This document shows, piece after piece, positions 20,590 through 56,850 of a DNA stretch of 64,000 nt; within the stretch, counting starts at the first letter, position 1; every line of letters starts with the position of its first letter. This DNA comes from Cycas panzhihuaensis (lineage: Eukaryota; Plantae; Cycadophyta), in assembly GCA_023213395.1 (NCBI GenBank), contig CM041465.1, forward strand, positions 149,861,741 through 149,925,740. Reading direction: 5' to 3'. The notes beneath the pieces were generated by a model that was given only the letters and a program-made list of their open reading frames with translations, did no database searches and had not been told where the DNA came from. Position numbers and translations under genes: made by a program.

Positions 20590-23500
20590 ACCATTGAGAT
20601 AAAATAGAGATAAAACATATTAAAATTGAGATTAAATATTGTATTCTTTAAACCTTAAAAAAATCTTATATTAAAATAAGAATATTCTTTAAATAATATT
20701 CTAATTTTTATAATATATATATAATTATAAAATTATATAATTTTTATTTTACTATTCAATGTTAGGCAACTCCTACGATAACCTATGACCTACAAACGAT
20801 GCAAGAAGGCAATAAAAATATAGAGAAAGAGTCTGAGATGCTTTACACTAGATCAAAGATGTGTTGGGTAGATATAAGAAGTAGACATCTAACATGTATA
20901 TATAAAGAAACCCACCAATGTAGAGCTAACACATTTAATGTAAAAATACAAAGAAATAAACACCCAATGCATTAAAACAATGGACATAGAGCTCATAGAA
21001 TGCCAACATAAGAATGCCCACATGCTTGAGATAAATCAACATTGAGATGTCAACATGAATAGCTAATAATAAGCCTCACATCAGAGTCATTGAATACCCA
21101 CAGATACCGAGAACATGTTATTATCACATAGTGTAAGGAGATGAAACATATAAATAAAATAAGGAGAAACCTTATAATAAACACATTCAATACCTAGAGA
21201 AATCAAAGTTGTAAAGAGCTCATAGAGAAAAGCTTGAATAGAGCTCAAAAACATGGACAAGAAAAGATTTATGCCTACTTTCAATACAAAGAGATACCAA
21301 AGAGAGCTATTAAGAAGGAGAAAGGGTCATAAGCATTCTAAAAGTGCCATAGATATATTCTATAAGTTGTGGGCTTAATTCAAAGAATATATATGGCATC
21401 TCAATGTTGTAGACAACATTATATACACTTTAAAATAGAAGTAGGCTCAATTTAAATCACATAAGCATCTCATATATCACCATTTCTCTAGGATCAACTG
21501 ATTATGTACAAAAGAACCAAGCATAAGATACCTACAAACTCTCAAAGGTTGCATACCTATAGTGAAGACACCATGCCCCACATATGACTATGAAATGTGA
21601 GATAAGAGATGAGAAAACACTCTATAGATCATTATAAAGGCTAAATTGAGAAAATTTTAAATGAATAAAGTTAAAAAAAGAGATAGACTAGGCTAAATGC
21701 ATAGCTAAGGAAGAAGATGATTATTTTTGTATGCCTATTATTACAAGATGCCATGAAATTGCTTAGTATAACCTATCAAATTGATCATTATCAACCTAAC
21801 TATGCAATGGTAAAAGAAGTTTAACAAAAAATGGCTTCCTATAATAGATGTAATTGATTTTATAGAGGGTCCATTTACCACCACATATGCTTAGAGTATT
21901 CTTAAATTAACTTTGGTTTAAAAATTATCAAACTTTTTATAAAGTTTAGTGATATTAAATTAGATTATAATATAATTTAAAGTCTATCCCTTGCCTACTA
22001 ATCCTTAGTCACATGCTTATTTAGATGTCAAAGCCTTTTTTAGACCATGAAAAGTCTATTTTTTAAAAATAAAAATATCAGTGGTACTTTTTTTAGAGCT
22101 TTGATTTAACAACCATCACATGTTATATTTGAAGAGAAAATGTAATCACAAAAGTAATGTATTAATAAAACTCTAAACTATGCAAAGAACAAATAACATA
22201 AATATACTAATCACATAATAAAAAACACCAGGAGATTCTAGACTAAGCATAGACCCTTTATTAATCTGAGCAATAACCAAAGAATTACAGAGATGAAAAC
22301 CCTAACTTTCTCATTAACTCATCAAAGACTTATCCAACTTTCATACATATGTTGTTATAAAAGAATATATAGACATAACTTTATAAGATATTACCTTCTA
22401 GTTTGACAATATAATAGGAATAAACCATAGGCTAGAAAAGACCCCCATAAAAAACCTAAAATTGAACCCTCACCTTGGGGGCTATTGTCCCCCTATAACC
22501 CCTAATCGGGGCCCTACAATGGGTCCCCATACCCTACTAAGGGATTCAGGTGTGATGCCTATACCTATGTAACACTTGCAAAGTATTTAATATATCCAAT
22601 AATTTCCTACTTATTAAACACTTTACAAGCAACTTACATACACAACTACTAAATACTAAAATCACAAACAATGATTATCTTTCTACATCATTTAAATTTT
22701 TCTATACTAATAGTCTTAGTCAATTAATGAGTCTATAATACTCTCCTATGTAGTAATCTTATGTAAGTCCACCTTATGGTTTTGAACCATTTCTCTTACA
22801 AAATATAACTACACATCAATATACTCTGAGTGAGCATAAAATATGAGGTTCTTCACTAAGTAGATTATATTTTGACTATCATAATATATTCTCACAACAT
22901 CCTACTTGAAGTTGACATCTATGCATAATCTCTATAATCAAACCACTTCTCTACATGTATGAGTAACTACTATATACTCTGCTTATATGCCAAAAAGTAC
23001 CATAACTCGTTGTCTTTTACTAGTCCAACTAATTGTACCACCACAAAGGATTAAAACATACTCGCTTATAGATCTTCTACTATGAAGATCTCCTACATAA
23101 TCAACATCAATAAATCCTTGCAGGTTTATTATTATACTCTCTATGGGATCTCCTTGGCAGCAAATTCCATAGTTTAATGTACCCTTTAGATACCTAAATA
23201 TCCTTTTTATAGCCACGCAATGCTCTTTGCCTAGGTTTAATATATATCTACTAACTACTCCCACTATATGGGTAATGTCTGATCTAGTGCAAATTGTCGC
23301 ATACATAAAACTACAAATTGCACTAACATAAGAGATAAATACCATGTCTTCAACTTCTTGGTGAGTCTTTAGATATTGTTAAACTAATAATTTTAAACCA
23401 ATAGGCAGAGTGACATTAACTAATTTACTATCCTATAAACTAAACCATTCTAGTATTATCTTAATGTACCACTTTTAGTTAAGTTAAATCTTCTTGTTTC

Positions 23501-23850: not shown

Positions 23851-26800
23851 TGTTAGGGATCCAACCCCTAACTTACCTTCTCTTAAATTCTCTTATATCT
23901 TCTACTTATTCTCTCTCTTATATCTTCTGTTTCTTCTACTTCTTCCCTTTTCTTAATATCCTATATGAAAAAGTAGAAGGTTGTGTAGTGGTCATTGAGC
24001 ACTATATATATTCATGTAATAGCCCACATGTATAAGGAGGAGGTTGTGTAGTAAGCATAGAGCTATATATATATTTATGTAATCCTTAGAGTATGGTATC
24101 TAAAATATCATTATTATTATATGTAATTGAGAGGATGCCCCCTCAAAGGGTATTACAATGTAAGTGCTATTTTAGAGTTATTTATATATTATGTTGGTGT
24201 GTAATTGTTATTAAGGAGTGCTGTCCTACCAGGTGGTATCAGAGCGATCGATCCATATCTTGTGAGACAGTCAAAGGTACTAAATAATTAATTTTTTTCC
24301 ATCAATTTTTTCTCACCAGTACCTATTCTCATTTAATTTTTGCTTAGTTACTTTACTTTTTAGGGATAGATAACACTCCAATCGAGTCTCTACCCTAACA
24401 CTACCATTGGGTAGTTTTCTTTTGCATTTAGATAGAGACCCTATGCTGGAGGTCTATAAATATCATGAGGATATGTTGTTTTAGGCTAAGCATATTATGG
24501 CTTTTCTATCCTTTACGTAAAGGACTGGACATCATACTCCTAAATCATACCTTAGACAGAACTTGGTTATGGAATTGCATCTCCATGTACCTGCAAGTAT
24601 ATAGGAGGACCCCCTAGATAGGACTTCCTAGTATAGGTAACCATAGGAAACCTATTGACCATCTGTAATTTGTAGTGCACCGATAAGCAGTTATCCCTAA
24701 TAAGTTACTCTCCATGTACCCTAGAGGCGGGGTAGTTCAACTATAGAGTAGAGTGTTTGCCTTTATAATTTGATACTATTTATGACCGAGATCAATATAT
24801 CGAAAGACCTACAAGCTAGACAAGCCCATACTTAGTGTACCTAGTCAGTTTATTAGTGGTTTGTGCACACCTAGTTAGTCGTTGAGTTAGTCATCATCAA
24901 TTTGTTAAATCCAATGTGTCTAGCCAATTTGTCATCAACTCATATGCACATAGTCAGTCAGCCAACTGGTGACTGAAAAATAAAAAATAAAAAAAGCAAA
25001 AAATAAAAAGAAAAGAAGTAAAAAAATAAAAACAAAATCAAGAAGCAAAAAGAAAAAAAGAAAAAAAAGTAAAAAAATAAAATTAAAAAAAAGTCTATAT
25101 TGCCTCATTGTAAAACATTGGGGATAATAGTCTATAGACACCCCATCAAATCCTTTCATTCACATTTACCAACTAGGATTCAACTTAGATCTTGTGAATA
25201 AATGGCCCCTAAGATAAACCCAAGTTAGACTCAAGATCTCAATGATGCTGTCACACAACTTTGAGGAGATATATTATAAATCCAAAATGATTTCAATGAA
25301 AATTTTGAAGTAGTAATGCTAGAGCTCACATCCATGAAATCTTTTAAGGAAGAAAAGATTGATTTTGATGATACTACTCATATAGGTGGGGGTCACTTCA
25401 CTAAAGAAGATGAAGATAGTGATGCTAGACGCTTTTGTCCAAACTTCCTTTCTAAGGTAGAAATCAAGAAGTTTAATAGCACCGATGTACAATACTTTTC
25501 TCTTCATCAAGTTCTAGCAGATAAGAAGATCCCTCTTACTTCTCTACACATGGAAACTGAACCCTACCAATGGTACTAATGGGTTATGAAAATAATTTAT
25601 GGGCTTGGTTATCAATGGGAGGGTTTTGTCAAGGATCTTACAACTCAATATGATAGTACCTAGGATCATGACCACTTTAACTAGTTAGTTAAAGTCAGGC
25701 AGGAGGGGATTGTTTTAGCTTATATAACAAAATACTAATATCTCTCCATAATGGTTAATGGTCTTTGTCAAAATAAATTACTTGAGTTGTACATTGGTGG
25801 GTTACGAGATGACATCAGACATGAGTTACGACTCTTAAAACTTGATAACATCTCTACAGCTATCAATTTTGCTTAACATATTGAAGCAACAAATAATACA
25901 TTCTAACCCCTCCAATGAACATTCCCAGAAAAACAACCATAATTTCAGGTTCTTAGTGTATGACAAATGACTTCCAAAGATATGGATGAGAAATGATTGA
26001 AAGGGTTATATTTTTGTTGTAACCAAAAGTAGAATAAAGACCATAAGTGTCCTAAACAATACTTAATCATAATTGAGGATGTCCAAGATGATGAACCAAT
26101 AGAGGAAGCCTTATTAGAGCCAAAAAATAATGATTGTGACCCACCTGAAGAGGAAGAAGAAGATACTATTATTATATCTATGTATACCTTAGCTAGAATT
26201 ATAGCCCCTCAGACACTCAAACTTATTGGGTACATTAAGAAAAGGAAGGTGGTTGTCCTCATAGATTCTAGGAGTACCCACAATTTTATTAATTGAAAAC
26301 TTAAAGAACTCAATTGTTTTCCATATCCTATCAAAATTTTCTAGGTTATAGTGGCTAATGGAGGGACACTTGCTTGTGGGGGAAAATGTCAGAATATCAA
26401 GTTATAAATGGGTGACTATCACCTCTCTACTTCTATGTATACCATTCTCATTAGAGGAGTTGATGTTATATTAGGGGTACAATGGCTCAGACCACTAGGG
26501 ACCATTCAACTAAATATGCAAGAGCTCTTCATCTGATTTACTTCTGAAGGAATTGACTATCAATTGAATGGGATCATTCCTCCTCCAACCTAAATCATTA
26601 GCTCATACCATAAGGAGAGTCTCATTAAAAAGGGTGGTATAGGAATCATTACTATATGTTATGCTCTAGAAGGTCAGGAACTTCTAATAGAAGGGGACAT
26701 TGTCCAAGATGATGGTATACTAAATGACTTAAAATTGGTACTTCACCACCACAACCAAGTCTTTCAGGATATTCCTCAAGGTCTTCCCCTAATATGTGGC

Positions 26801-29800
26801 CAAGATCATAGCATTAACATGGTATATGGAAGTAATCCTCCTTGTATTTGACCATACTGATATCCCTACTAACAAAAGAATGAAATTGAACGATTTAAGA
26901 ACTCCTTAATGCTGGTACTATTAGGAAAAGTAAAGGCACTTTTCTACCCTAGTAATTTTAGTAAGAAAAAAAGATGGCCCATTTCATATATGTGTAAACT
27001 ACCATGAGCTCAATAAGATAACCATCAAGGACAAGTTTCCTATACTAGTCATTGATGAACTCTTAGATGAACTCCATGGAGCAACATTCTTCACATTATT
27101 AGACTTGCACTCAGTATACCATCAAATTAGGATTAAGGCAGAGGATATTCATAAAAATACATTTCATACATATGAAGGAAATTATGAATTTTAGTCATGT
27201 TATTTAGCTTGACTAATGCCCCATCCACCTTTCAAGGACTCATGAACAAACTCTTTCAGACTTATTTAAGGAAGATCATATTAGTCTTTTTGGATGATAT
27301 TCTGATCTTTAGTCGTACATGGGAAGACCATCTTCAGCATATTGATAAGGCATTACAAGTACTTATAGATAATCATCTTTATACAAAAAAATCAAAATAT
27401 CAATTTAGGCAAATAGAAATAGAATATTTGGGCCATATTATCTCTCAAGAAGGAGTTAAGGTGTATCCTAAGAAAATTACAGTTATCACAAACTGGCCTA
27501 AACCTAAAAACATTAAGGGCCTTTGTGGATTCTTAGGAGTCATAGGGTATTATCGAAAGTTCATTCATGGCTATGTGAGGATTGCTTCCCCTTTAATCAA
27601 CTTATTAAAAAAGGATTCCTTTCATTGGAATGATAAGGCCTCTGAAGCATTTGAATACCTAAAGGTGGCTTTAGCTACCACACTAGTCCTTACAATACCA
27701 AACTTTACAAAGACCTTCACCATTGAATATAATGCATCAGGGCAAGGCATTGGAGTAGTCTCAATGTAAGAAGGGAAACCTTTAGCCTTTGAAAGTCATC
27801 AACTTACACCCAAAGAATAGGTCAAATCAACATATGAGAAGGAGATGTTAGTAATTCTCCATGCATTTAGGAAATGACAATAATATTTATTGGGAACATA
27901 TTTCCAAATTAAAATACACCATGATAGCTTAAAATATTTCTTATCTCAAAGGATAACATCTAAGGAACAACAAAAATGGGTCACCAAAATGAAATCTTTT
28001 GACTTTGAAATCATATATAAAAAAGGCAAGGATAATATAGCCAGTGATGCTTTATCTTGTAAAGAAGAAGGCTCTACACTATATTCTATCACCACAGTCA
28101 ATCCCTCTTGGATAGTGATCGCTAAGCAAGAATGGGATCATGACCCATTTATAAAGTAGATCATTCAAGACCTTCAAGCTAGAGTAGGGCATTCAACCTA
28201 TTATATACGGTCTATAAATATTCTCTAGTACAAGAATCAAATATATAGATGCCCTTACTCTAGCCTCAAGGAGCAAATTTTACATGATACACATGCCTCT
28301 CCAATAATAGGTCACTCAGGGTTCCTACAAACATACCACCACTTAAAACAATCTTTCTTTTGGAAGGGACAAAAAGGAGATATAAAGAGATATGTTTCCT
28401 TATCTAAAAATTTTCAATGACATAAGACAGAAACAATAAAATCTTTAGGATTGTTGCAACCCTTTCCCATACCAAATCAACGATGGAAAGAAATTTCTAT
28501 GGACTTCATCGTGGGTCTACCTAAGTCAGAAGAAAAAGATACTATACTGGTGGTTGTTGATAGACTAACTAAATATGCTCATTTTTGTGGCATTCAAGCA
28601 ACATATAAGGTAAAGTAAATTCCTGAGATCTTTGTAAAGGATATACACAAGTTGCATAACATGTCCAAATATATAGTCAGTAATCGGGACTCTAAATTTA
28701 CTAATAACTTTTGGATAAAAATCTTCCATCTACTTGGTACTAAACTAACAATGAGCTCATCCTACCATCAACAAATACATGGTTAAACTGAGGTGGTTAA
28801 TAAGTGATTTGAAGCATATGTTCATTATTATGCTTTAGATAAGTAGGGCCAGTGGCATCATTGACTTTCTTTAGCATAATAGTGGTATAATACAACCTAT
28901 TATGCATTAATAGGAATGACTTCATTCCAAGCATTCTATGGTTATGAACCACCCACACTTAAGAACTATGACATAATCAGTTCTAAGGTTCAAGCAGTCA
29001 AGGACCACATCCAAGAAATAACACATATTCTTAAGTTAAGGAAAATTTAAACCTTACATAAAATCAGATAAAACAACAGGCACATAAAGGGTGAAGTGAA
29101 TAAGCATTTCAACCAGGTTACTTATGGTTGCAACCATACAAGTAGCCATCTCTCAAATAGGATGGGCAACATAAATTACAACCTCGATTTTATGGGCCTT
29201 ATAAAATTCTCAAGAAGATTATTGAAGTTGCATATGCCTTGAACTTACCACCACTATCAAGGATCCATAATGTCTTTTATGTTTCATGTCTCAAGAAGGT
29301 AATTGGGTAACAAGTACAAGTTTAAACAGAATTATCTATCTTAAATTAGAAGGGGCAACTTCAACTCATTCCAGAATATATCATTGATTGAAGAATTTAA
29401 CATCTATAATCTAGGCAAATCATTAAGTATCTAATCAAATGGAAAAAACTTCCACGATAAAATGCAACCTAGGAGAATAAGCAATTTGTCCTAGAGCACC
29501 CTGAAATCACCAAACTTTGAGGGTAAAGCTTTTTTAAGAGGGGGACTTCATTAGAGATCCAACCTCTAACTTAACTTCTCTTATATTCTCTTATATATTA
29601 TACTTCTTCTTTCTCTTATATCTTATATTTCTTATACTTCTTCCCATTTCTTAATATCCCACATGCATAAGTAGAAGGTTGTGTAGTGGTCATTGAGTGC
29701 TATATATATTCATGTAATATCTCACATACATAAAGAGGAGGTTGTGTAGTGAGCATAGATCCATATATATATTTATATAATCCTTAAAGTATGGTATCTA

Positions 29801-29929
29801 AAATATCATTGTTATTGCATGTAATTGGGAGGTTAACCCCTTAAAGGGTATTTCAATACAAGTGCTCTTTTAGAGTTACTTGTGTGATATGTTGGTATGC
29901 AATTGTTATTAAGGAGTGGTATCCTACCA
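23851..29929 (+). mobile_element. Element E: Ty3/Gypsy chromovirus (Reina-like), full length, degenerate
   Basis: LTRs 23851-24231 and 29549-29929. PBS TGGTATCAGAGC 24234-24245. PPT 29536-29546. gag from about 25202, PR LIDSRSTHNF, RT VFLDDILIFS, RH, INT, chromodomain-like YLIKWK..NAT*E. Confidence 0.93.
24363..24712 (+). ncRNA. Conserved structured 5'-leader RNA module, copy 1 (Gypsy E)
   Basis: Collinear motifs and stems shared with 30676-31046 and 42792-43113. Confidence 0.7.
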
Positions 29930-30063
29930 AGACCAAGACCCGAGACCCTTCTTCCTTGAGGTCACTATGAAGAAACATAATCTTCACATCCATTTTATAA
30001 CATAACCCCACCTTTCTTTAGCAAGAGGGAACCACCAACAAGTAAGGATTAAGGGGTTTAGTA

Positions 30064-30187
30064 AGTTATACGTATGGACCGTTAAGTCGTCCAATAAGAT
30101 GTAAGGCCGTTAGGGCCACCAATAGAGTTATGTGTATGGACCGATAAGTCGTCGAATAAGATATAAGGCTGCTAGGGCCACCAATAG
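30064..30187 (+). repeat. Two-copy 62-bp tandem repeat in the F LTR (also present in the 3' LTR)
   Basis: AGTTAT..TATGGACCG.TAAGTCGTC.AATAAGAT.TAAGGC.G.TAGGGCCACCAATAG twice. Confidence 0.9.
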
Positions 30188-30675
30188 AATCATTAGGGAT
30201 GAAGACCCTTACTTATGTATTTAAAGGGTTAAACCACTCGTAATGTATTGAGTATGATATCTTGAAAGGAGAAAGTACTTCAGTACTCATTTTGGTAATT
30301 CATTTTCTGTGATCTACTTGCGCATTCGTGTTATTTAGCTTCATTTTTGCTAATAATCACTTCTACGAGCCTAGATTTCTGATAAGGAATGGTCCAAGTG
30401 GTATCAGAGCTGCGTTTGCGATCGTGGGAAGCTACCCAGAATAGCAATTTTTTTTTTTTTTCCTGTATGATTGAGTACTCTCTCTCCCTAAGCAGAGATT
30501 AAGGAAAGACCTTCACTCAGTACTCTCTCCAAGAAGATTGAGGAACGATAGCAGGACAAATTAGAGGTCGCGAAGCAAAGGGGAATTTCGACCTTTAGGT
30601 ACCGTAAGCAATTTATTTCTTCTACATTCAATTTAATTTTTAATCTTTCTTTTTCTACATTGGGTTATATTCCAA

Positions 30676-31046
30676 GGGTAGATAACACTGCTAGGTGGCT
30701 ACCTTTTATGTCCCCTCTCACCTCTTCTTTCTGGATAGATAATACCACTGGGCAGCTACCCAAGTAGTTAGGTAGAGACCCTGTACCATGGGTCTTTAAA
30801 GATCACAGGGATCTGTTGTTCTGGCTAAGAGCATCGTGGCTTTACTGGCCCTTGCGTGAAGGACTGGAGATAACACTCCTGAACCAAGCCCTGAGCAGAA
30901 CACAGCTCTGAGTGTACCTCCACGTACCTCCACGTATATAGGAAGACCCCTTTAGGATTCCAAAACCCTCCCTAGCGCAGGTAACCTATTGGCCGCTAAA
31001 GTCTTGTAGTGCAGTGGTTAGCGGTTAGTGCCACGAAGTTACCTGC
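30676..31046 (+). ncRNA. Conserved structured 5'-leader RNA module, copy 2 (Gypsy F; best preserved)
   Basis: Stems GGGTAG/CTACC, AGACCC/GGGTCT, AGATC/GATCT, GTTCTG/CAGAAC, GCAGGTAAC/GTTACCTGC, TGGCCGCTAA/TTAGCGGTTA. Confidence 0.75.
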
Positions 31047-34000
31047 CCCAAACATCTACATCAGAAGTTTATTGGCAGGCCTATAAGACCAAGCACACCT
31101 CATTCTGCAGTGGGTAGAACACATTTGATCATTCGCTGCTTCCCCTGCCCTAGTCTTAATCACAAGCCACTGACTGCCTGAATTCAAAACTTGTCAGAAC
31201 AGTTAAGCCTCTAGAGAAAAAAAAAAAGAAGAAAAAAAAAAAAAAAAGAAAAGAAAAAGGAAAAAAGAGAGAGCAAAGAAGGAAATATATATATATATAT
31301 ATATATATGAAAAAAAAAAAAAAAAATCACTTAGCTCTTACTCACAGTGCAAAAAAAAAAACCCTTATAACTCATATACCTCAATTCAATCAGCATCCCG
31401 TAAGGGTCATTTTGCACTAGGTTAGTCTATACCTCAATTTTCACTCTTTTTGTACCTGGGCCACTGGTGGGCCCCACCACTCCAAATTCACCTTAAAACT
31501 CATACATCCCATTTCAATAAGTTTTTTATGCTCTTTCTAGTGGACTAAATATCTTGCTTATGTAATTTTGGGGTCAACAGGCTAGAGACACCCCACATTC
31601 CCTTATTTGCCCCCTCTTTCCCATATAACAACTCCCTATTCTTATATCCCATTCTTTCTCGAATCTGTCCTACTTCGTTCTTTCCCTTCTTTCTACTTAC
31701 TCCCTCTTCTTTAATCCCTTTCTTCAACTCCAATGGAAAAAAATCAAACAGAATTTTTTTTTGAGTTGACCAATGATTTGTCTAACTTCAAAATAGAGGT
31801 CAGCGATAAACTCAGTAGCATGCCTACCAAATCTGACCTGGATGACACTAAGAAAGAGATTATCAAACTGCTTCAATAGTGGGTGTCACCCTAACCACAA
31901 AGCATAAGAGCTTCTACCTCAATGGGCAACCAACCTCCCCCTTCTCCAGGAAGCAATGCACATACAGGAGGTTCTCCACTAAGACAGCTATTTTTCCACC
32001 ATAAGATCAACATTCCTATCTTTGATCTAGACGTGAATAGAGAGTGCACTCGAAGCTAGATTAATAAGTTAGAATCCTACTTCACTCTTCACCTGATGTT
32101 AGAAGAGGACCAACTCTTATATGCTTCCATTCATTTAGATGGTCAAGCTCACCATTGGTTTAACTGGTGGAAGTAGGAACATCCCTCTCACCAAACTTGG
32201 TCCCACTTCATTAGTTGTTTCTTTGAACAATATGAAGATATATGGAGTCAATCATTTTTTACACGACTCACCCAGCTTAAGCAGACATCAACTGTAGAAG
32301 CTTACACGGATGAATTTCAAGCTTTATACAATTGCATGCCATAAAGCCAAAACTTGGACAAACAAACAGTGATTGATATTTATGTGGCAGGACTCCAAGA
32401 TCATATTCAGATGAAATTAAAGACAATGGCAATTTACTCCCTTAAGGAAGCTTTCAAGTGGGCCCGTGTAGTAGAAGCTGAGTTTGCAGCAAACAGACCC
32501 TCAGCCATTCGACAGGATAACTCTTGGTTCTCATGCACTCGACAAGTAAACCTCCAGCAACCTCGACCTTAATTTGACGATGCCTCTCATCCTCAAGCTG
32601 ACTTCACATGTCCTCGACCACGACAGGATGATTCTTAACCATCTATTGATCGCTAGAATGAGGATACATCCACCAAAAGAGTCCAGATTTCTCAAGCTGA
32701 AGCACAACGTCGACTTGAGGCTGGCCTTTGTATGCAGTGTGTAGAAAAGTGGACTTCCGAGCATGGTTGTTTTTGCCAAGCGTGGTGTATGGTTTTCTCA
32801 ATTGACCCATCCCTCTCCCCTAATGATCCCTCTGATTTTGACTCTGACCAGGAGGCTGATGATGAAACCCATGATGATCCTACACTAGACCCCCAACTTG
32901 AAGTATCTATATCCACTGTCACCACCTCCTCCTACCCCGAACCCCTAAGAGTTAGAGGCATTCTCCGCAAGACTCCAATATCTATCTTGATTGACAGTGG
33001 TGCGTCACTTAACTTCATTGATATTTCAATTGCTAGATAACTTAACCTATATATTATCCTAAAAACTAGCTTCACATGTTCTCTACCAGGGTACCAGAAA
33101 CTCCATTGTGTAGGTGTTATTAAAAACCTCTAAGTCCAAATTGGCTCATGCCTTTTGGTGTCAAACTTCTATGCCTTGTCAATATGAGGATCTGATGCCA
33201 TCTTAGGGATTCAATAGTTGCAAATACTAGGGACCTATAGCATGAACAAATTGCCTATAAATCCATTCATTGCCTTCGAAGACCACATGGGGTGAAACCA
33301 CAAAATTTACAGAATGCAATCCCCCCCTAACCAAGTGGTCTCTCCTGGACGTATTAAATTGCATCTTCAATCTCACCTAGGGTATATAGTCTGCCTCAAT
33401 AATATTCAAATCGAACCATAAATTCATCCCTACATCCAGGATGTCATTACCCAATATGAACAAGTATTCGCCCCTCTGCCTACCACTACCCCTCCCGATG
33501 GCGATTTCTTTCATATATTTGACCTCCAATCTAACCATGACCCCATCAGCCTTCGACCTTACTGTAACTCATACTTCTAAAACAATGAAATCGAGAAACT
33601 CACAAATGAGCTCCTCGACATAGGCATAATCCAACCTAGTAAAAGCCCTTATGTAGCCCCAATTATCTTAGTTCGGAAGAAGGATGGCTCCTTTCGCCTC
33701 TATGTTGACTATAGGGAATTAAATAAGATTACCATTAAAAATAGGTTTCCCACCCCTCGCATAGATGACATGCTATATGAAATCCATGGCGCAACCATCT
33801 TTTATAAGTTAAACCTCCAATCTAGTTACTACCAAATCCCAATTACCCCACAAGATTGTCATAAGATAGCATTTTGCACACATCATGGCCATTTTGAGTT
33901 TCGAGCAATGCCCTTTGGCCTTTGCAATGCCCCAACAACCTTCCAAGCTCTCATGAATAAAATCTTTGGGCCCTACCTTCAAAAGTTTGTCATAGTTTTC

Positions 34001-37000
34001 TTCGATGACATTCTTATTTATAGTGCATGCCTGGATCTCCATATCTAACACTTAGAAATTGTTCTTCAAATATTGCAGAACCACCAACTCTATGCAAAAC
34101 TATCTAAGTGTGAGTTCAGACAATCAGAACTCAAAGATTTGGGCCATATCATATCATCAGAAGGGGTATGTATAGACCCCAACAAAATATCGGTCATCAT
34201 AACATGGCCAACACCTATCACTCTTACCCAGCTACAAGTATTTCTTAGGCTCATAGGGTTTTATTGATGCTTCGTACGTAACTATGATGCTCTTACCACT
34301 CCATTAACTAACCTCCTTCGTAAAGAGGCTTTTCAATGGTCTCTCGAAGTAGAGGTTTCCTTTTCCCACCTCAAGGTTGTAATGACCTCCACTCCAGTCC
34401 TCATCACTCCTGATTTTAACCAACCCTTCCAACTTGAATGTGATGCTTTAGGGTTTGGTTTAGGCACAGTCCTAATGCAAGATTTTCATCCCATTGCATT
34501 TGAAAGGCAAAAATCAAAAGATCACGAGCTTCATCTCTCTACATATCAGAAAGAAATGAAGGCTATTCTCCATGCTATTGATAAATGGCGGAAATATCTC
34601 TTAGTCTCTAAGTTTACTATTCTTATGGATCATCATAGCCTCCATAATTTATTGACTCAGCCAGTCTTGTCTGAAGATCAAGCTAAGTGGGTTCATTAAT
34701 TACAAGTCTTTGACTTCTAAATAGCATATAAAAAAGGTAAAGACAATATAGTGGCATATTCTCTTTCATGTCTCCATCCTAACGACAATGTTCCTAACCC
34801 AAGCCTCCATGCCATTAGCAACCCCCAACCCCTTTGGCTTGACAAACTATACGTTGAAAATCAAGCCCAGCCAGACTATCCTAATTGGAGGGAAAAAGTT
34901 CTCACCCATAAAGGTTGGCCAACCTTCAACAATCAACTCCTCTACCATAATCATATCTTTGTCCATCCCTCCTCCTCATTCATCCCTAAAATCCTAATAG
35001 AATACCACTCGTCCCCGCTTAGCGACCACTCTGGCTTCGATAAGACTTATTAATGGATTCACGCAGATTTCTTTTGGCCCCACATGAAGACCACCATATT
35101 CACCTTCGTATCAGAATATGACACCTGTCAACAAAATAAAGTAGAGACCAAACCTCTCCTTGGCCTTCTCCAACCATTAAATATTCTGCAAGGCAAGTGG
35201 CAAGATATTGCCATGGACTTCATCACGGGCCTATCCCCATCTGCCAAGTTTGACTCCATTTGGGTAATCATTGATCGATTAACCAAGTACTCACACTTTC
35301 TCCCAGTGCACACCTCATATTCATCCTCTCGTCTCGTTGACTTATATGTCCAATTCATATTTCACCTCTATGGTTTTCCATCATCTATCGTTTGTGACCG
35401 AGACCCTAAGTTTACTAGCTCCTTTTGGCAAGAACTCTTTAAGGCTATTAGAACCTCATTTAAGATGAGCTCTGCCTACCACCCACAAATAGATGGCCAA
35501 TCAGAGGTTCTAAACAAAACTTTAGAAACTTATTTACGTTGCTTCGCTTCAGAATACTAAGCTAAGTAGACCTCATAGCTTGCCCTGGCTGAGTATTGGT
35601 ATAACTCCTCCCATCATTCTGCCATTGGTATGTCCCCCTTTTTGGCTTTTTATGGCTACCACCCACCTTCTCACCATACCCTAGCCACAAATTTTAGAAA
35701 CAAATTGCAACAAAAGCTTCAAAAAATGGATCAAATCATGCATGCCCTTTGACAAAATCTAGCTAGTGCTCGAAATCAAATGAAGCAACTGGCAAACTGC
35801 CACCGATCTGATCAATCCTTTGATATTAGAGATCTAGTATACCTCCGCCTCCAACCTTATAAGCAATAATCACTCAAGTCCCATCAAGGGTATAAACTAA
35901 GGCCCCGCTACTATGACACTTATAAGATCCTACACAAAATTGGTGAAGTTGCTTATGCCCTTGAACTCCCCCCAAACACTAATATTCATAATGTCTTCCA
36001 TGTGTCCTGCCTAAAATAATACCTTGGAGCTAAAGTTATACCCTACACAACCCTTCCCATTCTCTCTAAAGAATAAACTCTTATAGTTCCTCCTGATAAA
36101 ATCCTTGCCAGTCGCCAGTGCCGCCTTTGGAATCACACTATTTCTGAACACTTGATATAGTGGGTTGGCTGCGATACTAATGAAGCTACTTGGGAGTCAG
36201 AAGAGTTCATCTAGAAACATCCTCATCTCCAACGCTGCGAGGACTCAGCATCTCAGAGGGGGGGACCTGTAACATAACCCCACCTTTCCTTAGCAAGAGG
36301 GAACCACCAACAAGTAAGAATTAAGGGGTTTAGTAAGTTATATGTATGGACTGTTAAGTCATCCAATAAGATGTAAAGCGACTAGGGCCACCAATAGAGT
36401 TATGTGTATGGACCGCTAAGTCATCCAATAAGATGTAAGGCCACTAGGACCACCAATAGAATCATTAAGGATGAAGACCCTTGCTTATGTATTTAAAGGG
36501 TTAAACCACTCGTAATGTATTGAGTATGATATCTTGAAAGGAGAAAGTACTTCAGTACTCATTTTGGTGATTCATTTTCTGTGATCTGCTTGCGTATTCA
36601 TATTATTTGGCTCCATTTTTACTAATAATCACTTCTACAAGCCCAGATTTATGAGAAGGAATGGTCCACATTTGATCCACCTTAAGATCATAGGCATCTA
36701 CTATAATCAATAAAAATTTAATTGAAGCTACCTTTGTAATATAAGAAAATATATTACTAAAATTTATTCCCTTGACTTAGGAATATTCTTTTGGTACTAA
36801 GTAGGCCTTGTACTTTTCTATTTTACCATCTACTTAAAACTTCTTCTTGAAGATCTATTTGTTATTAATAAGTTTTTTGCCATCAGGTAGATCCACCAAA
36901 TCCTATGTGTTATTTTTGTCCAAGGTTGTCATTTCTTCTTTTACAGCCTTCATCTAGAGTTAACTCTCTTTTGAATTTAGAGCCTCATGAACAACACTTG

Positions 37001-40000
37001 GATTATCATCTGTAGTAAATAAAATGAAAGATGAGTGATGCAAATCTTTAAGAATATACCTATTTGGTTGTCTTCTCTCATGAGTTGATCTCCTTAAGAT
37101 GTGGGGTTATTGAGGTTAGGCTACCTCCATAACTGGTCCTTCCTCTTTAATTAACTTATATTCTAATATAGAATCTTCATCCCTTATCTCAAACCATACC
37201 TTCTTAGAGTCTTTCTCCTTTAGTTCTCCATCTTACTTTAGAGACTTAAACTCCTTTTTAAAGGAAACATCACAACTATACATAATTTTTTGTGTTTTAA
37301 GGTTACAAAGCTTATGCCTTTAACACCATCACCATAGTCAATGAAAATAGTTTTTTGTGCTTTAAAATCAAACTTAGTGCTCTACAGGCTAGGAACATAT
37401 ATGAAAGCTTTATAACTAAAAACTCTAAGATGACCAAGAGATGACTTCTTACTAAAACATACTTCTTTAAGTATTTTATACACTAAGGAAGTCATTGGTA
37501 ATCTATTTATTAAGTAGCTTGTAGACATCATAGCCTTAACCCATAATTTCTTCTTTAACCTAGTAATATTAACCATAGTCCTTGATTTCTCGAACAAGGT
37601 CTTGTTCATTCTTTCAGTAACTTTGTTCTGTTGTGGTATATAAGGAGTTATCTTCTACTTTACTATCTTACACTACTTACAAAACTACTCAAACTCTTTT
37701 AAGTAAAACTCACCTCTATTATTAGTCCTTAATACCTTGATCTATGTGTCATTATGATTCTTGACTAAGACCTTGAATTCTTTGAATTTACTAAAGACCT
37801 TAGATTTTAGCTAGAGAAAATATAACAATGTCTTTTTTGAGAAATCATCTATAAATAAGACAAAGTATTTAGACTACCCATTGAAGGTACATCAATAAGT
37901 CCAAAAATAACATTATGTACCAGTTACAAAATACCCTTTACTCGCTTTAATCTTAAAGGAAAATTAACTTAATTCTATTTACCATATACATAATACTCAC
38001 AGGAATTAAAAACAAAAGAGCTATTAATTCTACATATGTCTTCTATTATACCTTTGGAGAATAAATCATGGATCCCTTTCTCTCTAATGTGGTCTAATAT
38101 CTAATGCTATAATATAGTGTTACCAATAAGTGATACTTAGGTCCTACCTGCATTATTGCTACTTTCTATAATATCTAGACTATAACTACCAATACACAAT
38201 ATGCTTATATCAAGCTTATACGACATTCCAAATCAAATCCCTCTTACTAACACAAATTCTTTTCAAACCATTTTATAATTATCTTTATCAAAAATCACTT
38301 CTATTTTTACATCACCCAATTAACTAATAGATAATAAACTCATAGGTAAACTAAGAATATGACTCACATTAGGGATAATTTTAATCCTTCCATCTCTAAA
38401 CTAAACCTTCACCATTCCATAACCCATAATTTATATGAATAATGTTCCATGAGGAATACTTCACCTCTATCAATACTTTTGTATTCATTAAACCACTCCT
38501 TATGGGGAGTAACATGAAGTGAGGCACTAGAGTCAATTAACCAAGACTCAACATTTGACAATTTACCTGAGGTTACTAAATAAATATTACTATCAACTTC
38601 ATTAGAGGATTTTGCTACCATGGAAGAAGTAGCTTTAGGTGGCATTTCCTTTTCAACCTTGGCTCAACACTAGCTCTTTAAATGGCCAATCTTATTATAT
38701 CTCTAATATACTAAGGGGCCTCTACTTGGAGATTTGGATTTCCCTATAGATTTTAGCCATTTGTTACTAGGCCTTTATTGGTTGTGATCTAATATTTGAT
38801 CTCTCACTACTAATTCTTCTTTAAAATGATGCTTAGAAGATTTTTACCTTATCTCTTCTCATAATAAGGTGGTAACAACATTGTCAAATATTATGGTATT
38901 AATAGTTATGATGTTAATCATCATCACAATATTATCCCAAGAATCATGAGATAAATATAATAGGGAAATACACTTATCTTCCTTAAACATTGTTATCCCA
39001 ACTGAAATAAGATGGCTCACCATGGTGTTAAATGTAATGAGATGGTCTGTAACTATATCTCCATCACTCATCCTAAGTGAATATAATTTTTTTCAAATAA
39101 ATAACTTATTAACTAGGGACTTAATCTTATATAAAGCCCCTAACTTATTCTATAGTTCTTCGTTCATAGACTTTATGACAACATTTAACAATATCATGTC
39201 TAAAATATATAACCTTATTGAACTAATTACTTTTGACCAAGCTTCTTTCAGTCTTCATCAGCCATATTCACAAGCTTTGTTTCTACTATAGTGATCTATT
39301 GATCCTTCACAATGAGTATATCTTTCATCTTTAACTTCTATAACTCAAAGTTTTAACCATTAAACTTTTCAATCTCTATCTTCATAGCGCTTTCCATGAT
39401 GTTCATACTCAAGTTTATTAGACAAGGCTCCCACTTGCCAAATAGCTTCTTACAGAATTAAAACCCTTAGCTCTTATACTAAATGAAGAGAAAATATAAA
39501 TATGGAAGTAATGTATTAACATAACTCTAAACTATAGAAAGAATAAATAAAATAAATTAACTAAGTACACAATAAAGAACACTAAGAGATTCTAGTCTAC
39601 ACATAGACCTTTTGTTAATTTGAGCAATAATTAATGAATTATAGAGATGAAAATCCCAACTCTTCCTATTGATTCAATAAAGATTCATCCAATTCTTACA
39701 TGTATCATTACATAAGAATATATAGATACAAATTTATAAGATATTGAATTGTGGTTTTATAATATAATGAGAATAAACCATAGGCTAAAAAAGACCCCAA
39801 TAAGACACCCAAAATTGAACCCTTACCTAGGGGGCTACTAGCCCCTTAAACCCCCCAATCGGGGGCCATACAATAGGCCCTTAGAACCCACTAAGAGGTT
39901 TGGATGTAATGCATATATCCATGTAACAGTTGCAAAGTATTCAAGATATCCAACGATATTTTTATATAAAATTTTAATGAAAATATAAGTGTTTTAACTT

Positions 40001-41910: not shown

Positions 41911-44900
41911 TATTAAAATATAATATCTAATCCTTTTTATATTAATGACACATGTCATTATGCTATGTATCGGTTACAAGTAGTTCAAGAGGGTTACAAA
42001 CCCTAATTGTATATATATACTCATATACTCTCAATAAGATTATCAAGTATTATTCATTAGCCATTTTAGCATTAATCCTACATGGTATCAGAGCCATTTT
42101 AGGTCTATATCTTGTCTAGAGAAATATTTTCGTACGACTGTACAGACAGGTCTGTACACTAGTAGGTCAAAAAGAATAAATCTTAGAATTTGATGAAATT
42201 CCACCAAGAGGGCCGTCTTGACTTGCTTTTCATTTTCTCTAAAGGATCAAATTCCAATTTTGTCATTTTGATGCCCTAAAGACTGCCCAAAGTTGTATGA
42301 CTGCCATTGGAGACTTTTGCTTGTTTCTCATTATATTGACGTCTATACTGGGAAAACTTGGTATCAATAGAAATCCCTCAGCATAATCTTTCCATTGATA
42401 TATGACTTAAAGGCCTTCTCCTTCAGATCTGAAAGAAATAAGCAAAATTGTGAAAAAACCCTAGCTGCCCATTAGAGTTTCACCTAGTTTTTTCTCCTCA
42501 CTGAGAGATCCATTCAAAAAAATAATTACAGATCATGAATCTACACATCAAGGCTATTCTTTTGACACCTCTTTCAGAGCATTTTGAGAAAGTTAATTTT
42601 TTGACTCATTTATTATGCAGTACTGCCATCTGTATAACTACTAGTAATAGTTTTTTAATCCCATGAAAGCACTAAAAAAACCTCCTTGTTGCATTTTCCT
42701 TGGTTTGACTGAGTATTCTAGTCCCTTTTATTTCTTGAAAATATATTAAAAAGGGAGATATATTTATTGCACTTGTCTTCTTCTTCTTCCACAGGTAGAT
42801 AACTCTACTTGGTAATTACCTGTTCCCAACCTTAGACACTCTATTCTGAGGGTCTATAAAAATCGCATTGGATTTGTCGTTCTTAGCTAAGCACGTTGGG
42901 AGTTCGAAACCATTGTGTGAAGTGAGGGGAACCAAAAGGACCCAATACCCAAGTCTTAGATAGAACTCGCTCATAGATTTGAGCCTCCATATATCGAAAG
43001 GTATATAGGAGGACCTTATAGGACCTTGAGCCCAACCTAGATTAGGAAGCCCAACTGACTACTGAAGCCTTGTAGTGTAGTGGTTAGTGGTTACTTCCAT
43101 GAAGCTACCTATCTCAAATCTCCATTGGAGCTTTATTGATAGCCCTACGAGTCCAAGTAATCTCGTGTCTAGACTTGATAGAATTACTCATCTTCTCATG
43201 GCTTCCTCTCTTCAACTTTCCAAGTTTGAAAAACTCACCGGTGATAACTATAAATCATGGAAGACTAAGATGAGATCCATACTAGTGGATCAGGGTGAAT
43301 GGGACCATACAGAGAGCATCAAACTTGAGCCTACAGATGTTGCTAAAAAGAAGGTACACATGGAACAAAAAGGTCTTGCACTTGCCTCAATAACTCTGTC
43401 AGTTGAAGACTCCATCCTACCTCACATAGCTGGTGCCACTAATCCTCATGAATCTTGGACCACATTGAAGACCCTGTATGCCTAGAAAAACACAGCTCGT
43501 GTCATAGCACTCAAAAGCTAAATGGCTACCCTAAGTATGTCTGAATCGGAAGACTTCACCTCTTTTCTTAGATGATTCAAGCTACTTCATGAAAACCTAA
43601 TGTCAGTTGGGGTGAGTTATTCAGATGGTGACCTCATTGACCTTATTATACACAAACTTCCTGCCCAATTCTGAAACTTTATTACATCTTATAAGTTGAC
43701 GACAGAAATTGCATAGCACTCAATCACTACTGTTTGTGGCCAACTTCTACATCATGAGCAGACTGAAACCAATCTCAAAAATGAATTGGAAAACGCATTT
43801 TCATCTAGAGTGAGTATATGAGATACAGGCACCACCAACACAGGAGTTTTTCATGGATTAGACTAAGGGAGAAGATGACCCACAAACTATACTCCTAGTA
43901 GAGGATGATCTTCTCCTTGCACTCATCCTATCTAGTACTCAAGAGGACGACTTGGTCACCAAATCATTTGTTATTATTGTGGAAAAACTAGTCACTACAC
44001 AACTGACTGTCATCACCATAAATCTCACATAGAAAGGGGAATCATAGCTTCAGGTAGCTACTCAGGACAACCTGACAAAAAGGAGTCAATTGAAGAAGAA
44101 GAAGAAGAAGAGACCGCATTTGTAACAACTCTTTCCTCAGCAGTAAAGAACATAAATCATGATGATTGGTTTATAAACTCTGGAGCTTCTAGACACATGA
44201 TCCACAAGCGAGCTTGGTTCAGCAGCATAAGGCCTTCTCAAAATTGCAGCTCAATTGAACTTGGAGATGACACCACTCATCCAATACAAGGACATAGAAC
44301 AGTTCCTATTACCTTGCCAAATGGGAACACTAAAAAAGTTGGCCATGTGCTCTATGTACCAGGAATGACAAAAAACCTGTTATCTATATCTCAGTTGACA
44401 GACAACAAGCTCCAGGTCCTATTTGATGGTGATGGATATGTCATTTTTGATAAATACAAAGGGAACAAAGTGATTGGTGAAGGCATTAAAACTAATGGAT
44501 TATACAAATTTCTTGCCACACCAGTTCACACTGCTCTTCGTGTAACTAAAAATATTGATAATGGAAAAATTTGGCATTTGTGTTATGGTCATTTGTCTTA
44601 TAATGCTTTATCCTTATTAAGCAAACATGATATGGTGTATGGCCTTCCATGGATAAAAAAATCTAGCTCTATTTGTAACACATGCATGATGGGCAAATAA
44701 CATAAACTGCAATTCTTTGACAACACTACAAGAGCACATTGCAAATTGCAACTAATTCACAGTGATCTCTGTGGTCCATTCACTCCTCCATCCTTACAAG
44801 GGGCACACTACTATTTGACCTTCATAGATGATCACACTAGAAAGATCTGGATCTATTTTCTTAAATTAAAGTCTGATGTATTTGACACCTTTCTTAAATT

Positions 44901-54367: not shown

Positions 54368-54982
54368 CCATTTCTCCCTAGATATATCCATTTTGCCGGT
54401 CAAAGATATCATTTGAATATTACACGAAATAGAGGTTATGTTGAACACTTGAAATGGAATTATTCCCATTGTTCTTTATAATAACTTGGGAAAGGGGAAA
54501 AATAAGAAAAGTAAATGGAACTATTTAATGAATCTGAAACTTATTCTTGGGTAGATCAACTGCAAAATGTTTTTGTAGAACTTCCGATACTTATTCGACA
54601 TATTTCTTTCTGAAATGTCCAATTCTCATTAAATCTTCTTGACTATAATTCATCAGGTCTGATAATAGCCCTATCTATAAGGGGAGAGCATATGATAAAT
54701 GGGACTGACTTTTCCTTTTCCTTGGGTTCTTGGCCTCCTGTTGGAGGTTTCAGGTTGAATACCAATATTTTAGGATGATCTATTTTAGAAAGGGAGTGTG
54801 TGCGAGTTATTTATTTGAATAATATGGTTGAATCCAACCAACTGCACAATAGTAAAGTGCATGATCTCAACGAATTACTTCTAAATGGAGAGTATGGAAG
54901 AACTATAGCATTTCGTAATTGATCAGGAAATGAACTTTTAGTTTCTACTAATCGATAACAGAAGACAATGAAATGGTTGAAA
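54368..54982 (+). other. NUPT: plastid DNA fragment (upstream spacer, atpF exon 1, start of the atpF group II intron)
   Basis: Plastid-type SD context CTATAAGGGGAGAGCATATG, atpF exon 1, and junction GGAGTGT|GTGCGAG. The outer ends are inferred from the flanking microsatellite. Confidence 0.85.
54692..54799 (+). pseudogene. atpF: Plastid ATP synthase CF0 subunit I (b) exon 1, with an internal deletion
   Basis: MINGTDFSFSLGSWPPVGGFRLNTNILG/[deletion]/IYFRKGV, followed by the group II intron 5' end GTGCG at 54800. Confidence 0.9.
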
Positions 54983-56640
<1,658 letters not shown>

Positions 56641-56850
56641 GAGGACATATTATTCTCTGTCATACTCGTTGGGGAGCATGACACATTAAAAAATGGACAA
56701 AGCTACCCTTTACAAGGGGTGGAGATATCACAAAGTTTGAATATACACCATGCCTCCATGAGGGAATCTAGTGTTGTAAACGAATAGTAGTTTATGCTCA
56801 TATCAGAGTAGAAAAAGGTTGGTCCCTTTTTTATCTTAGAGGATAAGGGA

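What the first reader, a model, noticed from the sequence alone, without database searches (positions are those of the whole stretch)
30676..31046. Large covarying RNA structure shared by the 5' leaders of otherwise unrelated LTR retrotransposons
Seen: a 320-370 nt module lies between PBS and gag in Gypsy E (24363-24712), Gypsy F (30676-31046) and Copia I (42792-43113), whose LTRs and remaining leaders do not align. The motif order is identical: GGTAG-ATAAH hairpin; AGAC..GGTCT-WTAAA; a short hairpin with compensatory changes (ATATC/GATAT, AGATC/GATCT, AAATC/GATTT); GTYGTTYT..GCTAAG pairing with CTKAG..YAGAAC around an inner T(A/G)YGTRAAG loop; a CTCC-AYRTAY..GTATAT-A-GGARGACC hairpin; and a terminal domain (AGGTAAC/GTTACCT in F versus AGGAAGC/GCTACCT in I; TGGCCGCTAA/TTAGCGGTTA versus TGACTACTGA/TTAGTGGTTA) capped by a conserved TTGTAGTGYA loop. 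Inference: selection acts on the RNA fold. Size, position and multi-domain form suggest an IRES-like translation element, a packaging or dimerisation signal, or a ribozyme. I do not recognise it as a known family.
Basis: partly seen in the sequence, partly recalled or inferred. Interest (0 to 1): 0.92.

Follow-up and report, generated by a model that had tools for sequence, protein, structure and literature searches.

The report
Leader module shared by Gypsy, Copia
Three dead plant LTR retrotransposons, two Gypsy-type and one Copia-type, carry the same roughly 400-base non-coding block between their primer site and gag; the shared block is real and unusual, but its proposed covarying RNA fold is not yet shown and an IRES role looks unlikely.

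Summary
Three colinear, sense-oriented copies of a non-coding block lie between a tRNA-iMet primer site and gag: Gypsy E 24363-24758, Gypsy F 30676-31098 and Copia I 42792-43159. Homology is robust without circularity: the Copia copy alone finds F at E=2e-29 and E at 1e-17. It is the only nucleotide similarity between the Gypsy and Copia elements. Between the two Gypsy elements it is about as conserved as the RT core. There are no solo or antisense copies, no TIRs, no module-flanking TSDs, no Rfam hit and no tRNA.

"Covarying" is not demonstrated. The consensus fold beats column shuffles (z=-3.8), but so does the reverse complement (z=-4.3). The 12 compensatory pairs do not exceed re-folded shuffles (mean 14.4).

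Sense-strand AUGs are depleted in the leaders, which favours ribosome scanning over an IRES. Contigs from three related species hold thousands of pieces matching the F leader and module.

Other windows of this genome carry many unchecked notes of such a block in Copia elements and across superfamilies. Sequence identity with this module was not verified.

The parts
30676..31098 (+). Module copy in Gypsy F. The first hairpin is duplicated (30676-30704 and 30733-30762) and a 10-nt unit CCTCCACGTA is duplicated near 30919-30938.
   Evidence: Sequence; alignment A1; nhmmer. Thousands of contig pieces in three species match this leader.
24363..24758 (+). Module copy in Gypsy E, the most decayed copy. 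Its terminal stem is partly broken and it has 7 ATGs.
42792..43159 (+). Module copy in Copia I. It ends about 40 nt before the gag ATG at 43198.
30399..30410 (+). PBS of F (TGGTATCAGAGC, tRNA-iMet type), directly after the 5' LTR at 29998-30396.
24234..24245 (+). PBS of E, directly after the 5' LTR at 23853-24231.
42083..42094 (+). PBS of Copia I, directly after the short 5' LTR at about 41911-42082.
42097..42791 (+). About 700 nt of leader between the PBS and the module in Copia I. Origin unknown, no long ORF.
   Evidence: Notes from other windows describe host-mRNA capture at this position (untested here).
31004..31021 (+). Conserved loop motif TTGTAGTGYAGTGGTTAG capping the terminal stem. 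The same motif lies at 43070-43087 in I, and E has TTGTAGTGCA at 24671.
   Evidence: 2 exact matches against 0.15 expected; folds.
30934..30948 (+). GTATATAGGARGACC, the 3' half of the CUCC...GGAGG hairpin. It is also present at 24597-24611 and 43001-43015.
   Evidence: This window gives the best strand-specific folding signal.
31215..31362 (+). A-rich tract downstream of the module in F. E has a counterpart at 24975-25095. Copia I has none.
31735..31879 (+). Likely start of F gag (ATG at 31735). E gag starts near 25204 and Copia I gag at 43198.

Best explanation
The block is a homologous, sense-oriented, non-coding domain of the genomic-RNA leader. It is an integral part of an abundant Gypsy lineage (E and F) and of a Copia element in this window, not an independent insertion. 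I infer that it acts in cis at the RNA level. The most likely role is a packaging or dimerisation platform of the retroviral Psi/DIS kind, built from several local hairpins with conserved purine- and UG-rich loops that Gag could bind. I infer that it crossed between lineages by template switching between co-packaged RNAs, which both use the same tRNA-iMet primer site. Translation of gag would still proceed by scanning through an AUG-free leader. Shown: homology, position, orientation, absence of solo copies, abundance, non-coding nature and AUG depletion. Inferred: RNA-level function, the packaging role and the recombination route.
For: Non-circular homology: I alone finds F at 1.8e-29 and E at 1e-17, and an E+F profile finds I at 1.6e-37, colinear over about 390 nt. 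The block is the only Gypsy-Copia nucleotide similarity. Between E and F it scores 72.6% over 186 nt and 66% overall, against 65% for the RT core; gag and the LTRs give no hit. All three copies are sense and lie between PBS and gag, with no other copy on either strand. Stops occur in all frames. The consensus fold has z=-3.8, and F and I alone each have z=-2.6. The CUCC hairpin window has z=-4.0 on + against -0.9 on -. One hairpin pair reads U-A, G-C and A-U in the three copies. At 8 of 16 listed variant sites the majority letter in related contigs matches E and/or I, so the true similarity is higher than seen here. The F leader and module are matched by 8-10 thousand contig pieces in each of three species, and a 541-nt contig in a run guessed to be RNA spans the module. 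Parasitic BARE2 keeps the dimerisation and packaging signals of BARE1 (PMC3735527), and shared 5' UTRs link non-autonomous and autonomous elements in sugar beet (PMC13570524). UTRs normally diverge faster than coding regions (bioRxiv 10.1101/2021.07.15.452536).
Against: Compensatory pairs are not above re-folded shuffles (12 against 14.4). The reverse complement folds as well (z=-4.3). Single-copy folds disagree on long-range pairs. Family-majority letters restore two predicted pairs and break two. One contig carries a mismatch at the pair that covaries in the three copies (table 7). No palindromic loop is conserved in all three copies. The distance to gag and to the PBS is not fixed. Two other iMet-primed elements in the window lack the block. 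Only the Copia gag keeps an intact CCHC knuckle here. There is no experimental or expression evidence.
Confidence: 0.45

Rival explanations
1. The block is a passive passenger. Leaders in this genome readily pick up foreign RNA by template switching. The block would be a piece of one abundant element's RNA copied into others, and its similarity would reflect the time since transfer plus amplification, not function.
For: Copia I has about 700 nt of unexplained sequence between the PBS and the block. Other windows of this genome have followed-up notes of host-mRNA capture in Copia leaders. Covariation is not significant. All three copies are old fossils, with LTR identity of 87-92.5%.
Against: Identity is only 57-66%, so the transfers are old, yet colinearity and exact 15-18-nt motifs persist. 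The block is always sense, whereas captured host pieces are noted as mostly antisense and next to the PBS. It is retained in two Gypsy families whose gag and LTRs no longer align. The block is AUG-poor.
Confidence: 0.2
2. The block is a DNA-level regulatory module in the leader: an enhancer, insulator or downstream promoter element made of transcription-factor sites. Known examples are the Drosophila gypsy, Idefix and ZAM 5' UTR insulators and enhancers.
For: The block is a mosaic of short, highly conserved islands separated by variable spacers. Both strands give equal folding z-scores. A 13-bp motif shared by the 5' UTRs of different Drosophila LTR elements acts at the DNA level (PMC8872304).
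Against: Several conserved islands are mutually complementary and form hairpins. The CUCC hairpin signal is strand-specific. No tandem-repeat organisation typical of those insulators is seen.
Confidence: 0.12
3. The block is an IRES-like or shunt-type translation element that lets ribosomes reach gag despite long, cluttered leaders.
For: In the Copia element the block ends about 40 nt before the gag ATG, behind about 700 nt of unexplained sequence. E and F have an A-rich tract downstream. The block is multi-hairpin and about 400 nt long.
Against: Sense ATG is depleted: the F leader has 6 against 12.6 expected (p=0.014), the I block through to gag has 1 against 5.6 (p=0.008), and ATG against CAT is 24 against 65 over the three leaders. 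F's two module ATGs are private to this copy. In E and F the block lies about 450-640 nt upstream of gag. No Rfam IRES family matches. An earlier follow-up on Copia copies reached the same view (s1-819455).
Confidence: 0.08
4. The block is an independent small mobile element (SINE or MITE) that inserted three times, or a self-cleaving ribozyme or retrozyme-like unit.
For: The terminal loop contains an A-box-like TAGTGYAGTGG, and copy I has a B-box-like GAGTTCGAAACC. An A-rich tract lies downstream in E and F.
Against: ARAGORN finds no tRNA. The box order is reversed and the B-like box is not conserved. There are no TIRs, no TSDs at the block edges and no poly(A) at the block end in I. There are no solo or antisense copies. 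Rfam gives no hit to any ribozyme, SINE-related family or tRNA at E<=10.
Confidence: 0.04

Closest known systems
Retroviral and LTR-retrotransposon leader packaging/dimerisation domains (Psi/DIS; Ty1 5' RNA domain), and their retention by parasitic partners such as BARE2 with BARE1
   Same: Lies between PBS and gag in the sense orientation. Several hundred nt long with multiple hairpins. Conserved where the rest of the leader and the LTRs diverge. Compatible with an AUG-poor, scanned leader. Sharing of such signals between otherwise different elements is known (PMC3735527; PMC13570524).
   Different: Here the shared block crosses the Ty3/Gypsy and Ty1/Copia boundary between elements that each encode their own, unrelated Gag. 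No binding, dimerisation or packaging data exist. No palindromic kissing loop is conserved.
Modular exchange of non-coding RNA elements between virus families (s2m stem-loop; HCV-like IRESs in picornaviruses). Cited from my own knowledge, not checked here.
   Same: A discrete structured non-coding module found in otherwise unrelated replicating elements, explained by recombination.
   Different: Those are RNA viruses with experimentally defined folds and strong covariation. Here the fold is unproven, the hosts are retrotransposons within one genome, and the copies are only 57-66% identical.
Drosophila LTR-element 5' UTR regulatory DNA (gypsy, Idefix and ZAM insulators and enhancers; TERM motif; PMC8872304)
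   Same: Conserved sequence in the PBS-gag leader that is shared by different LTR element families.
   Different: Those are short tandemly repeated protein-binding sites acting on DNA. This block is a single colinear unit of about 400 nt with internal complementarity.
Gene-fragment capture in LTR retrotransposon leaders (noted repeatedly in this genome)
   Same: Foreign sequence sits in the leader, and the likely route is template switching during reverse transcription.
   Different: Captured pieces are noted as mostly antisense, next to the PBS, element-specific and decaying. This block is sense, recurrent across lineages, and conserved at about RT level.

Membership tests
Any Rfam 15 family (IRES, ribozyme, snRNA, SRP, tRNA, miRNA and others) | Covariance-model match at the gathering score, or at least E<=10 | tested here: not met
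   Whole window at gathering score: 0 hits. F region at E<=10: 0 hits. I region: only a chance MIR2655 hit on the minus strand, 15.6 bits against a cutoff of 122.
tRNA-derived SINE | A 5' tRNA-like head with an A box followed by a B box | tested here: not met
   ARAGORN finds none. The A-box-like motif lies at the 3' end in a loop. A B-box-like motif occurs only in copy I and lies upstream of it.
tRNA-derived SINE | Dispersed solo copies in either orientation, with TSDs and an A-rich or simple-repeat tail at the unit end | tested here: not met
   Only three copies, all inside leaders and all sense. There is no tail at the block end in I. The TSDs found belong to whole elements.
MITE | Terminal inverted repeats and flanking TSDs | tested here: not met
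   The block ends (GGGTAGATAAC ... CCAAG) are not inverted repeats, and no duplication flanks them.
Retroviral-type packaging/dimerisation leader domain | Sense position between PBS and gag on the genomic RNA | tested here: met
   PBS at 24234, 30399 and 42083. gag starts at about 25204, 31735 and 43198. The blocks lie between them on the + strand.
Retroviral-type packaging/dimerisation leader domain | Conserved RNA secondary structure supported by covariation | tested here: inconclusive
   Consensus z=-3.8, but the reverse complement gives -4.3. Compensatory pairs number 12 against 14.4 in re-folded shuffles. Local hairpins are shared by F and I.
Retroviral-type packaging/dimerisation leader domain | Specific binding by Gag/NC, RNA dimerisation, and requirement for encapsidation | not testable with these tools
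   Needs VLP RNA profiling, binding assays and dimerisation assays.
IRES | Cap-independent internal initiation (a functional definition) | not testable with these tools
   Indirect evidence is against it: sense ATG depletion in the leaders, variable distance to gag, and no Rfam IRES match.
Captured host-gene fragment | Recognisable similarity to a host gene or transcript | tested here: inconclusive
   No coding potential in any frame and no Rfam ncRNA match. No plant nucleotide database was available to search.

The most novel reading that the evidence does not exclude
A self-contained cis-acting RNA module of about 400 nt circulates horizontally among LTR retrotransposon lineages of both superfamilies within one plant genome. 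It would serve as a common packaging or dimerisation handle, so that Gypsy and Copia RNAs carrying it can be co-packaged. That in turn would promote cross-mobilisation, leader recombination and the host-RNA capture noted throughout this genome.
Probability: 0.25. Interest if true: 0.85.

Novelty: new variant of a known kind. Interest (0 to 1): 0.6.

Why it matters
Non-coding leaders of LTR retrotransposons are usually family-specific and evolve fast. Very little is known about packaging, dimerisation or translation signals in plant elements. A discrete leader block kept at about RT-level conservation and shared between Ty3/Gypsy and Ty1/Copia elements would be a concrete, testable candidate for such a signal. 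It would also be evidence that functional non-coding modules are exchanged across superfamilies. If it governs packaging, it would help explain cross-mobilisation, the success of non-autonomous elements and leader gene capture in a very large, TE-rich genome. If it proves to be a passive passenger, it still marks the leader as a recombination hotspot.

Tried and rejected
1. Rfam at gathering score and at E<=10 gave nothing usable. ARAGORN found nothing.

2. Two degenerate motif patterns were scanned in metagenome contigs and viral contigs, and one in prokaryote genome contigs. All gave 0 hits, so no extra copies were obtained.

3. The Copia gag N-terminus gave no candidates in the word-index protein search. 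HMMER against 1.84 billion representatives gave best hits of only 31-46% identity, with no close kin.

The plan to collect leaders next to homologous gag genes had to be dropped.

5. The repeat finder on the whole window was swamped by a low-complexity array at about 54.9-56.8 kb. It was replaced by a self-blast.

6. Covariation: the simple shuffle looked significant, but the test was rejected as circular after re-folding column-shuffled alignments. Single-sequence structure transfer was at the null level. Strict column-wise intersection of pair probabilities failed because of register shifts.

7. Majority letters from laid contigs were compared with predicted pairs. The result was neutral: 2 pairs restored and 2 broken.

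8. A search for a partner complementary to the conserved loop elsewhere in the elements was at chance level.

9. Coding or uORF potential was rejected, with stops in all frames. Splicing was rejected, with no clean GT..AG joint in the contigs.

10. The literature held no paper with the motif string. No description of a cross-superfamily leader module was found.

11. A findings look-up by sequence was blank.

Full report
**What is there.** The window is AT-rich (35% GC), TE-dense plant-like DNA. Self-blast, Pfam on ORF pieces and PBS/PPT inspection define three independent LTR retrotransposons, all on the + strand.

| Element | Span | LTR identity | PBS | Pfam evidence | Target duplication |
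|---|---|---|---|---|---|
| Gypsy E | 23853-29929 | 87% | 24234 | RVT_1, RT_RNaseH_2 | not seen |
| Gypsy F | 29998-36668 | 92.5% | 30399 | RVT_1, RT_RNaseH, rve | CATTT/CATTT |
| Copia I | about 41911-47466 | 87% (about 170-bp LTRs) | 42083 | Retrotran_gag_2, gag_pre-integrs, SH3-like, RVT_2 | CAAAT/CAAAC |

The gag ATG of Copia I is at 43198. All three elements are old, decayed fossils riddled with stop codons.

**The observation.** MAFFT aligns 24340-24760, 30650-31100 and 42770-43160 colinearly (A1). A profile built from them finds exactly these three places in the 64 kb, all on the + strand. Sub-profiles run with --max find nothing else on either strand.

Homology is significant without circularity:
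- The Copia copy alone finds F at E=1.8e-29 over 373 nt and E at 1e-17.
- A profile of E+F finds the Copia copy at 1.6e-37 over about 390 nt.

Exact shared strings exceed chance: GTATATAGGARGACC in all three copies, and TTGTAGTGYAGTGGTTAG in F and I.

Pairwise blast of whole elements shows that the block is the only nucleotide similarity between either Gypsy element and the Copia element. Between E and F the block scores 72.6% over 186 nt, or 66% over its whole length. The RT core scores 65%. gag and the LTRs give no hit at all.

- Similarity continues about 50 nt beyond the stated 3' ends.
- Pairwise identity is 57-66%.
- E and F belong to one broad Gypsy lineage and are not unrelated.
- The position relative to gag differs. 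The block ends about 40 nt before the ATG in Copia I and about 450-640 nt before it in E and F. In E and F an A-rich tract lies in between.

**Is it an independent insertion or a known RNA?** No.
- There are no solo or antisense copies, no terminal inverted repeats, no duplication at the block edges and no tail at the block end in Copia I.
- ARAGORN finds no tRNA. Rfam gives nothing at gathering score and nothing meaningful at E<=10. This excludes described IRES, ribozyme, SRP, snRNA and tRNA families.
- The terminal loop resembles a Pol III A box. However, it sits at the 3' end, and the only B-box-like string (copy I) lies upstream of it and is not conserved.
- All six frames are closed.

**Is there a conserved RNA fold?** The evidence is mixed.

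In favour:
- F and I fold better than dinucleotide shuffles (z=-2.6 each). E does not (z=-1.0).
91% of cells are paired and 12 pairs are changed on both sides.
- These 12 pairs beat the partner-shuffle control (1 of 500) and the slid controls.
- The short hairpin whose second pair reads U-A, G-C and A-U in the three copies is real.

Against:
- The structure was derived from these same sequences. When I shuffled alignment columns within conservation classes and re-ran RNAalifold, the consensus energy stayed clearly better than the null (-46.1 against -29.4 +/- 4.4, z=-3.8). The number of compensatory pairs did not (12 against 14.4 +/- 3.5).
- The reverse complement does as well (z=-4.3).
- Pairs of each single-copy MFE are not preserved in the other copies above a substitution null.
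- Independent partition functions agree only on local elements: the AGAC/GGTCT hairpin, the 5-bp hairpin, the CUCC...GGAGG hairpin and the terminal stem. Register shifts occur because of internal repeats.
- One contig shows a mismatch at the pair that covaries in the three copies (table 7).

In sliding windows the CUCC hairpin region is the only one with a strand-specific signal (z=-4.0 on +, -0.9 on -). My conclusion is that local hairpins are plausible, while a "large covarying structure" is not demonstrated with three decayed copies.

**Evidence from other genomes.** The F leader and block (30400-31210) shares 30-46% of its sampled 31-mers with runs from about a dozen coded organisms.

Laid at >=80% likeness, 8,400-10,400 Logan contig pieces per run match it in three different organisms. 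So this is a high-copy family that predates those species or is shared by them.

Differences from the window copy are mostly transitions, as expected for a decaying copy. At 8 of the 16 listed sites inside the aligned block, the majority letter equals the letter in E and/or I. The real inter-lineage similarity is therefore higher than this copy shows. Majority letters restore two predicted pairs and break two, which is neutral for the fold.

A small run guessed to be RNA from the best-matching organism has 124 matching contigs. One is a 541-nt contig that spans the block and continues upstream into sequence unlike F. This hints at transcription from another host element, but the RNA label is only a guess. 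No clean intron-like joints were seen. I built no consensus from these data.

**Translation.** Sense ATG triplets are scarce.

| Region | ATG observed | Expected from dinucleotide shuffles | p |
|---|---|---|---|
| F leader | 6 | 12.6 | 0.014 |
| Copia I block through to gag | 1 | 5.6 | 0.008 |

ATG against its reverse complement CAT is 24 against 65 over the three leaders. F's two ATGs inside the block (30708, 30788) are private to this copy according to the laid contigs. Copia I's single ATG (43099) sits where F reads CACG.

AUG avoidance is what a scanned leader shows, and an IRES-served leader would not need it. This agrees with an earlier follow-up on Copia copies elsewhere in the genome (s1-819455). 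Structured but scanned retroviral leaders are known (PMC3130279, listed).

**Context from the scan (unchecked notes).** Many first-reader notes in other windows of the same very large chromosome describe a conserved block of about 400-500 nt just upstream of gag in diverged Copia families. Several describe sharing with Gypsy elements or with non-autonomous elements. I could not verify that these blocks have the same sequence as this module.

Followed-up notes also report host-mRNA pieces captured after the PBS in Copia leaders. That fits the unexplained 700 nt at 42097-42791. I could not read those other loci, so they serve only as leads. If ORF-less elements really keep the block, that would favour a replication role over a translation role.

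**What I think it is.** The block is a homologous leader domain under constraint, exchanged between lineages.

The known kind it most resembles is the packaging/dimerisation region of retroviruses and LTR retrotransposons. Parasitic partners are known to retain that region (BARE2 with BARE1, PMC3735527; shared 5' UTRs in sugar beet, PMC13570524). Cross-superfamily sharing between elements that each encode their own unrelated Gag is the new aspect. UTRs normally evolve faster than coding regions.

- The mechanism is inferred: conserved single-stranded G/U-rich loops presented on hairpins bind Gag.
- The transfer route is also inferred: template switching between co-packaged RNAs that share the tRNA-iMet primer.
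- Confidence is 0.45 for a cis-acting RNA domain, with packaging or dimerisation as the most likely role within it.
- Rivals: passive captured passenger (0.20), DNA-level regulatory cluster as in Drosophila gypsy, Idefix and ZAM leaders (0.12; PMC8872304), IRES or shunt element (0.08), independent SINE, MITE or ribozyme (0.04).

**Limits.** The metagenome, viral and prokaryote scans found nothing. The protein route found no close gag relatives.

Noticed in passing
window 24975-25095 and 31215-31362: Both Gypsy elements carry an A-rich tract of about 120-150 nt some 120-220 nt downstream of the block and upstream of gag. F's tract is interrupted by a (TA)n run. Copia I has none. It could be a lineage feature (an A-rich translational enhancer?) or a relic tail of a captured polyadenylated RNA.
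   Followed up: partly
window 22130-22599 and 39484-39953: A 79%-identical repeat pair with a PBS-like TAGTATAAGAGC on the minus strand at 39470-39481. It is probably an older minus-strand LTR element. E and F inserted into it head to tail, 68 bp apart, in the opposite orientation. It has no copy of the block.
   Followed up: partly
window 18657-20589: A 513-bp direct repeat pair (85% identical) with TGGTATCAGAGT right after the first repeat (19173) and only about 0.9 kb between the repeats. It looks like a small non-autonomous LTR element (TRIM or LARD-like). It lacks the block.
   Followed up: partly
window 42097-42791: About 700 nt of unexplained sequence between the PBS and the block in Copia I. 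It has no long ORF on either strand. Other windows report captured host mRNA pieces at this position.
   Followed up: partly
window 31004-31021, 43070-43087, 42909-42920: The conserved terminal loop TAGTGYAGTGG fits a Pol III A-box/tRNA D-arm pattern. Copy I also has GAGTTCGAAACC (B-box-like), but upstream of it. ARAGORN and the Rfam tRNA model do not match.
   Followed up: yes
window 30676-30762 and about 30919-30938: F carries internal duplications of the block: the first hairpin twice, with a pyrimidine-rich spacer, and a 10-nt CCTCCACGTA repeat. Loose ends of laid contigs suggest that the hairpin duplication is typical of the family.
   Followed up: partly
window about 54890-56800: A low-complexity array of about 1.9 kb with unit spacing of 8-14 nt. 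It generates long spurious ORFs on both strands (54948-56787).
   Followed up: no
window 1230-2699 and 7546-8907: A further pair of long direct repeats (74-81% identical) about 6.3 kb apart, probably LTRs of another old element. No copy of the block lies between them.
   Followed up: no
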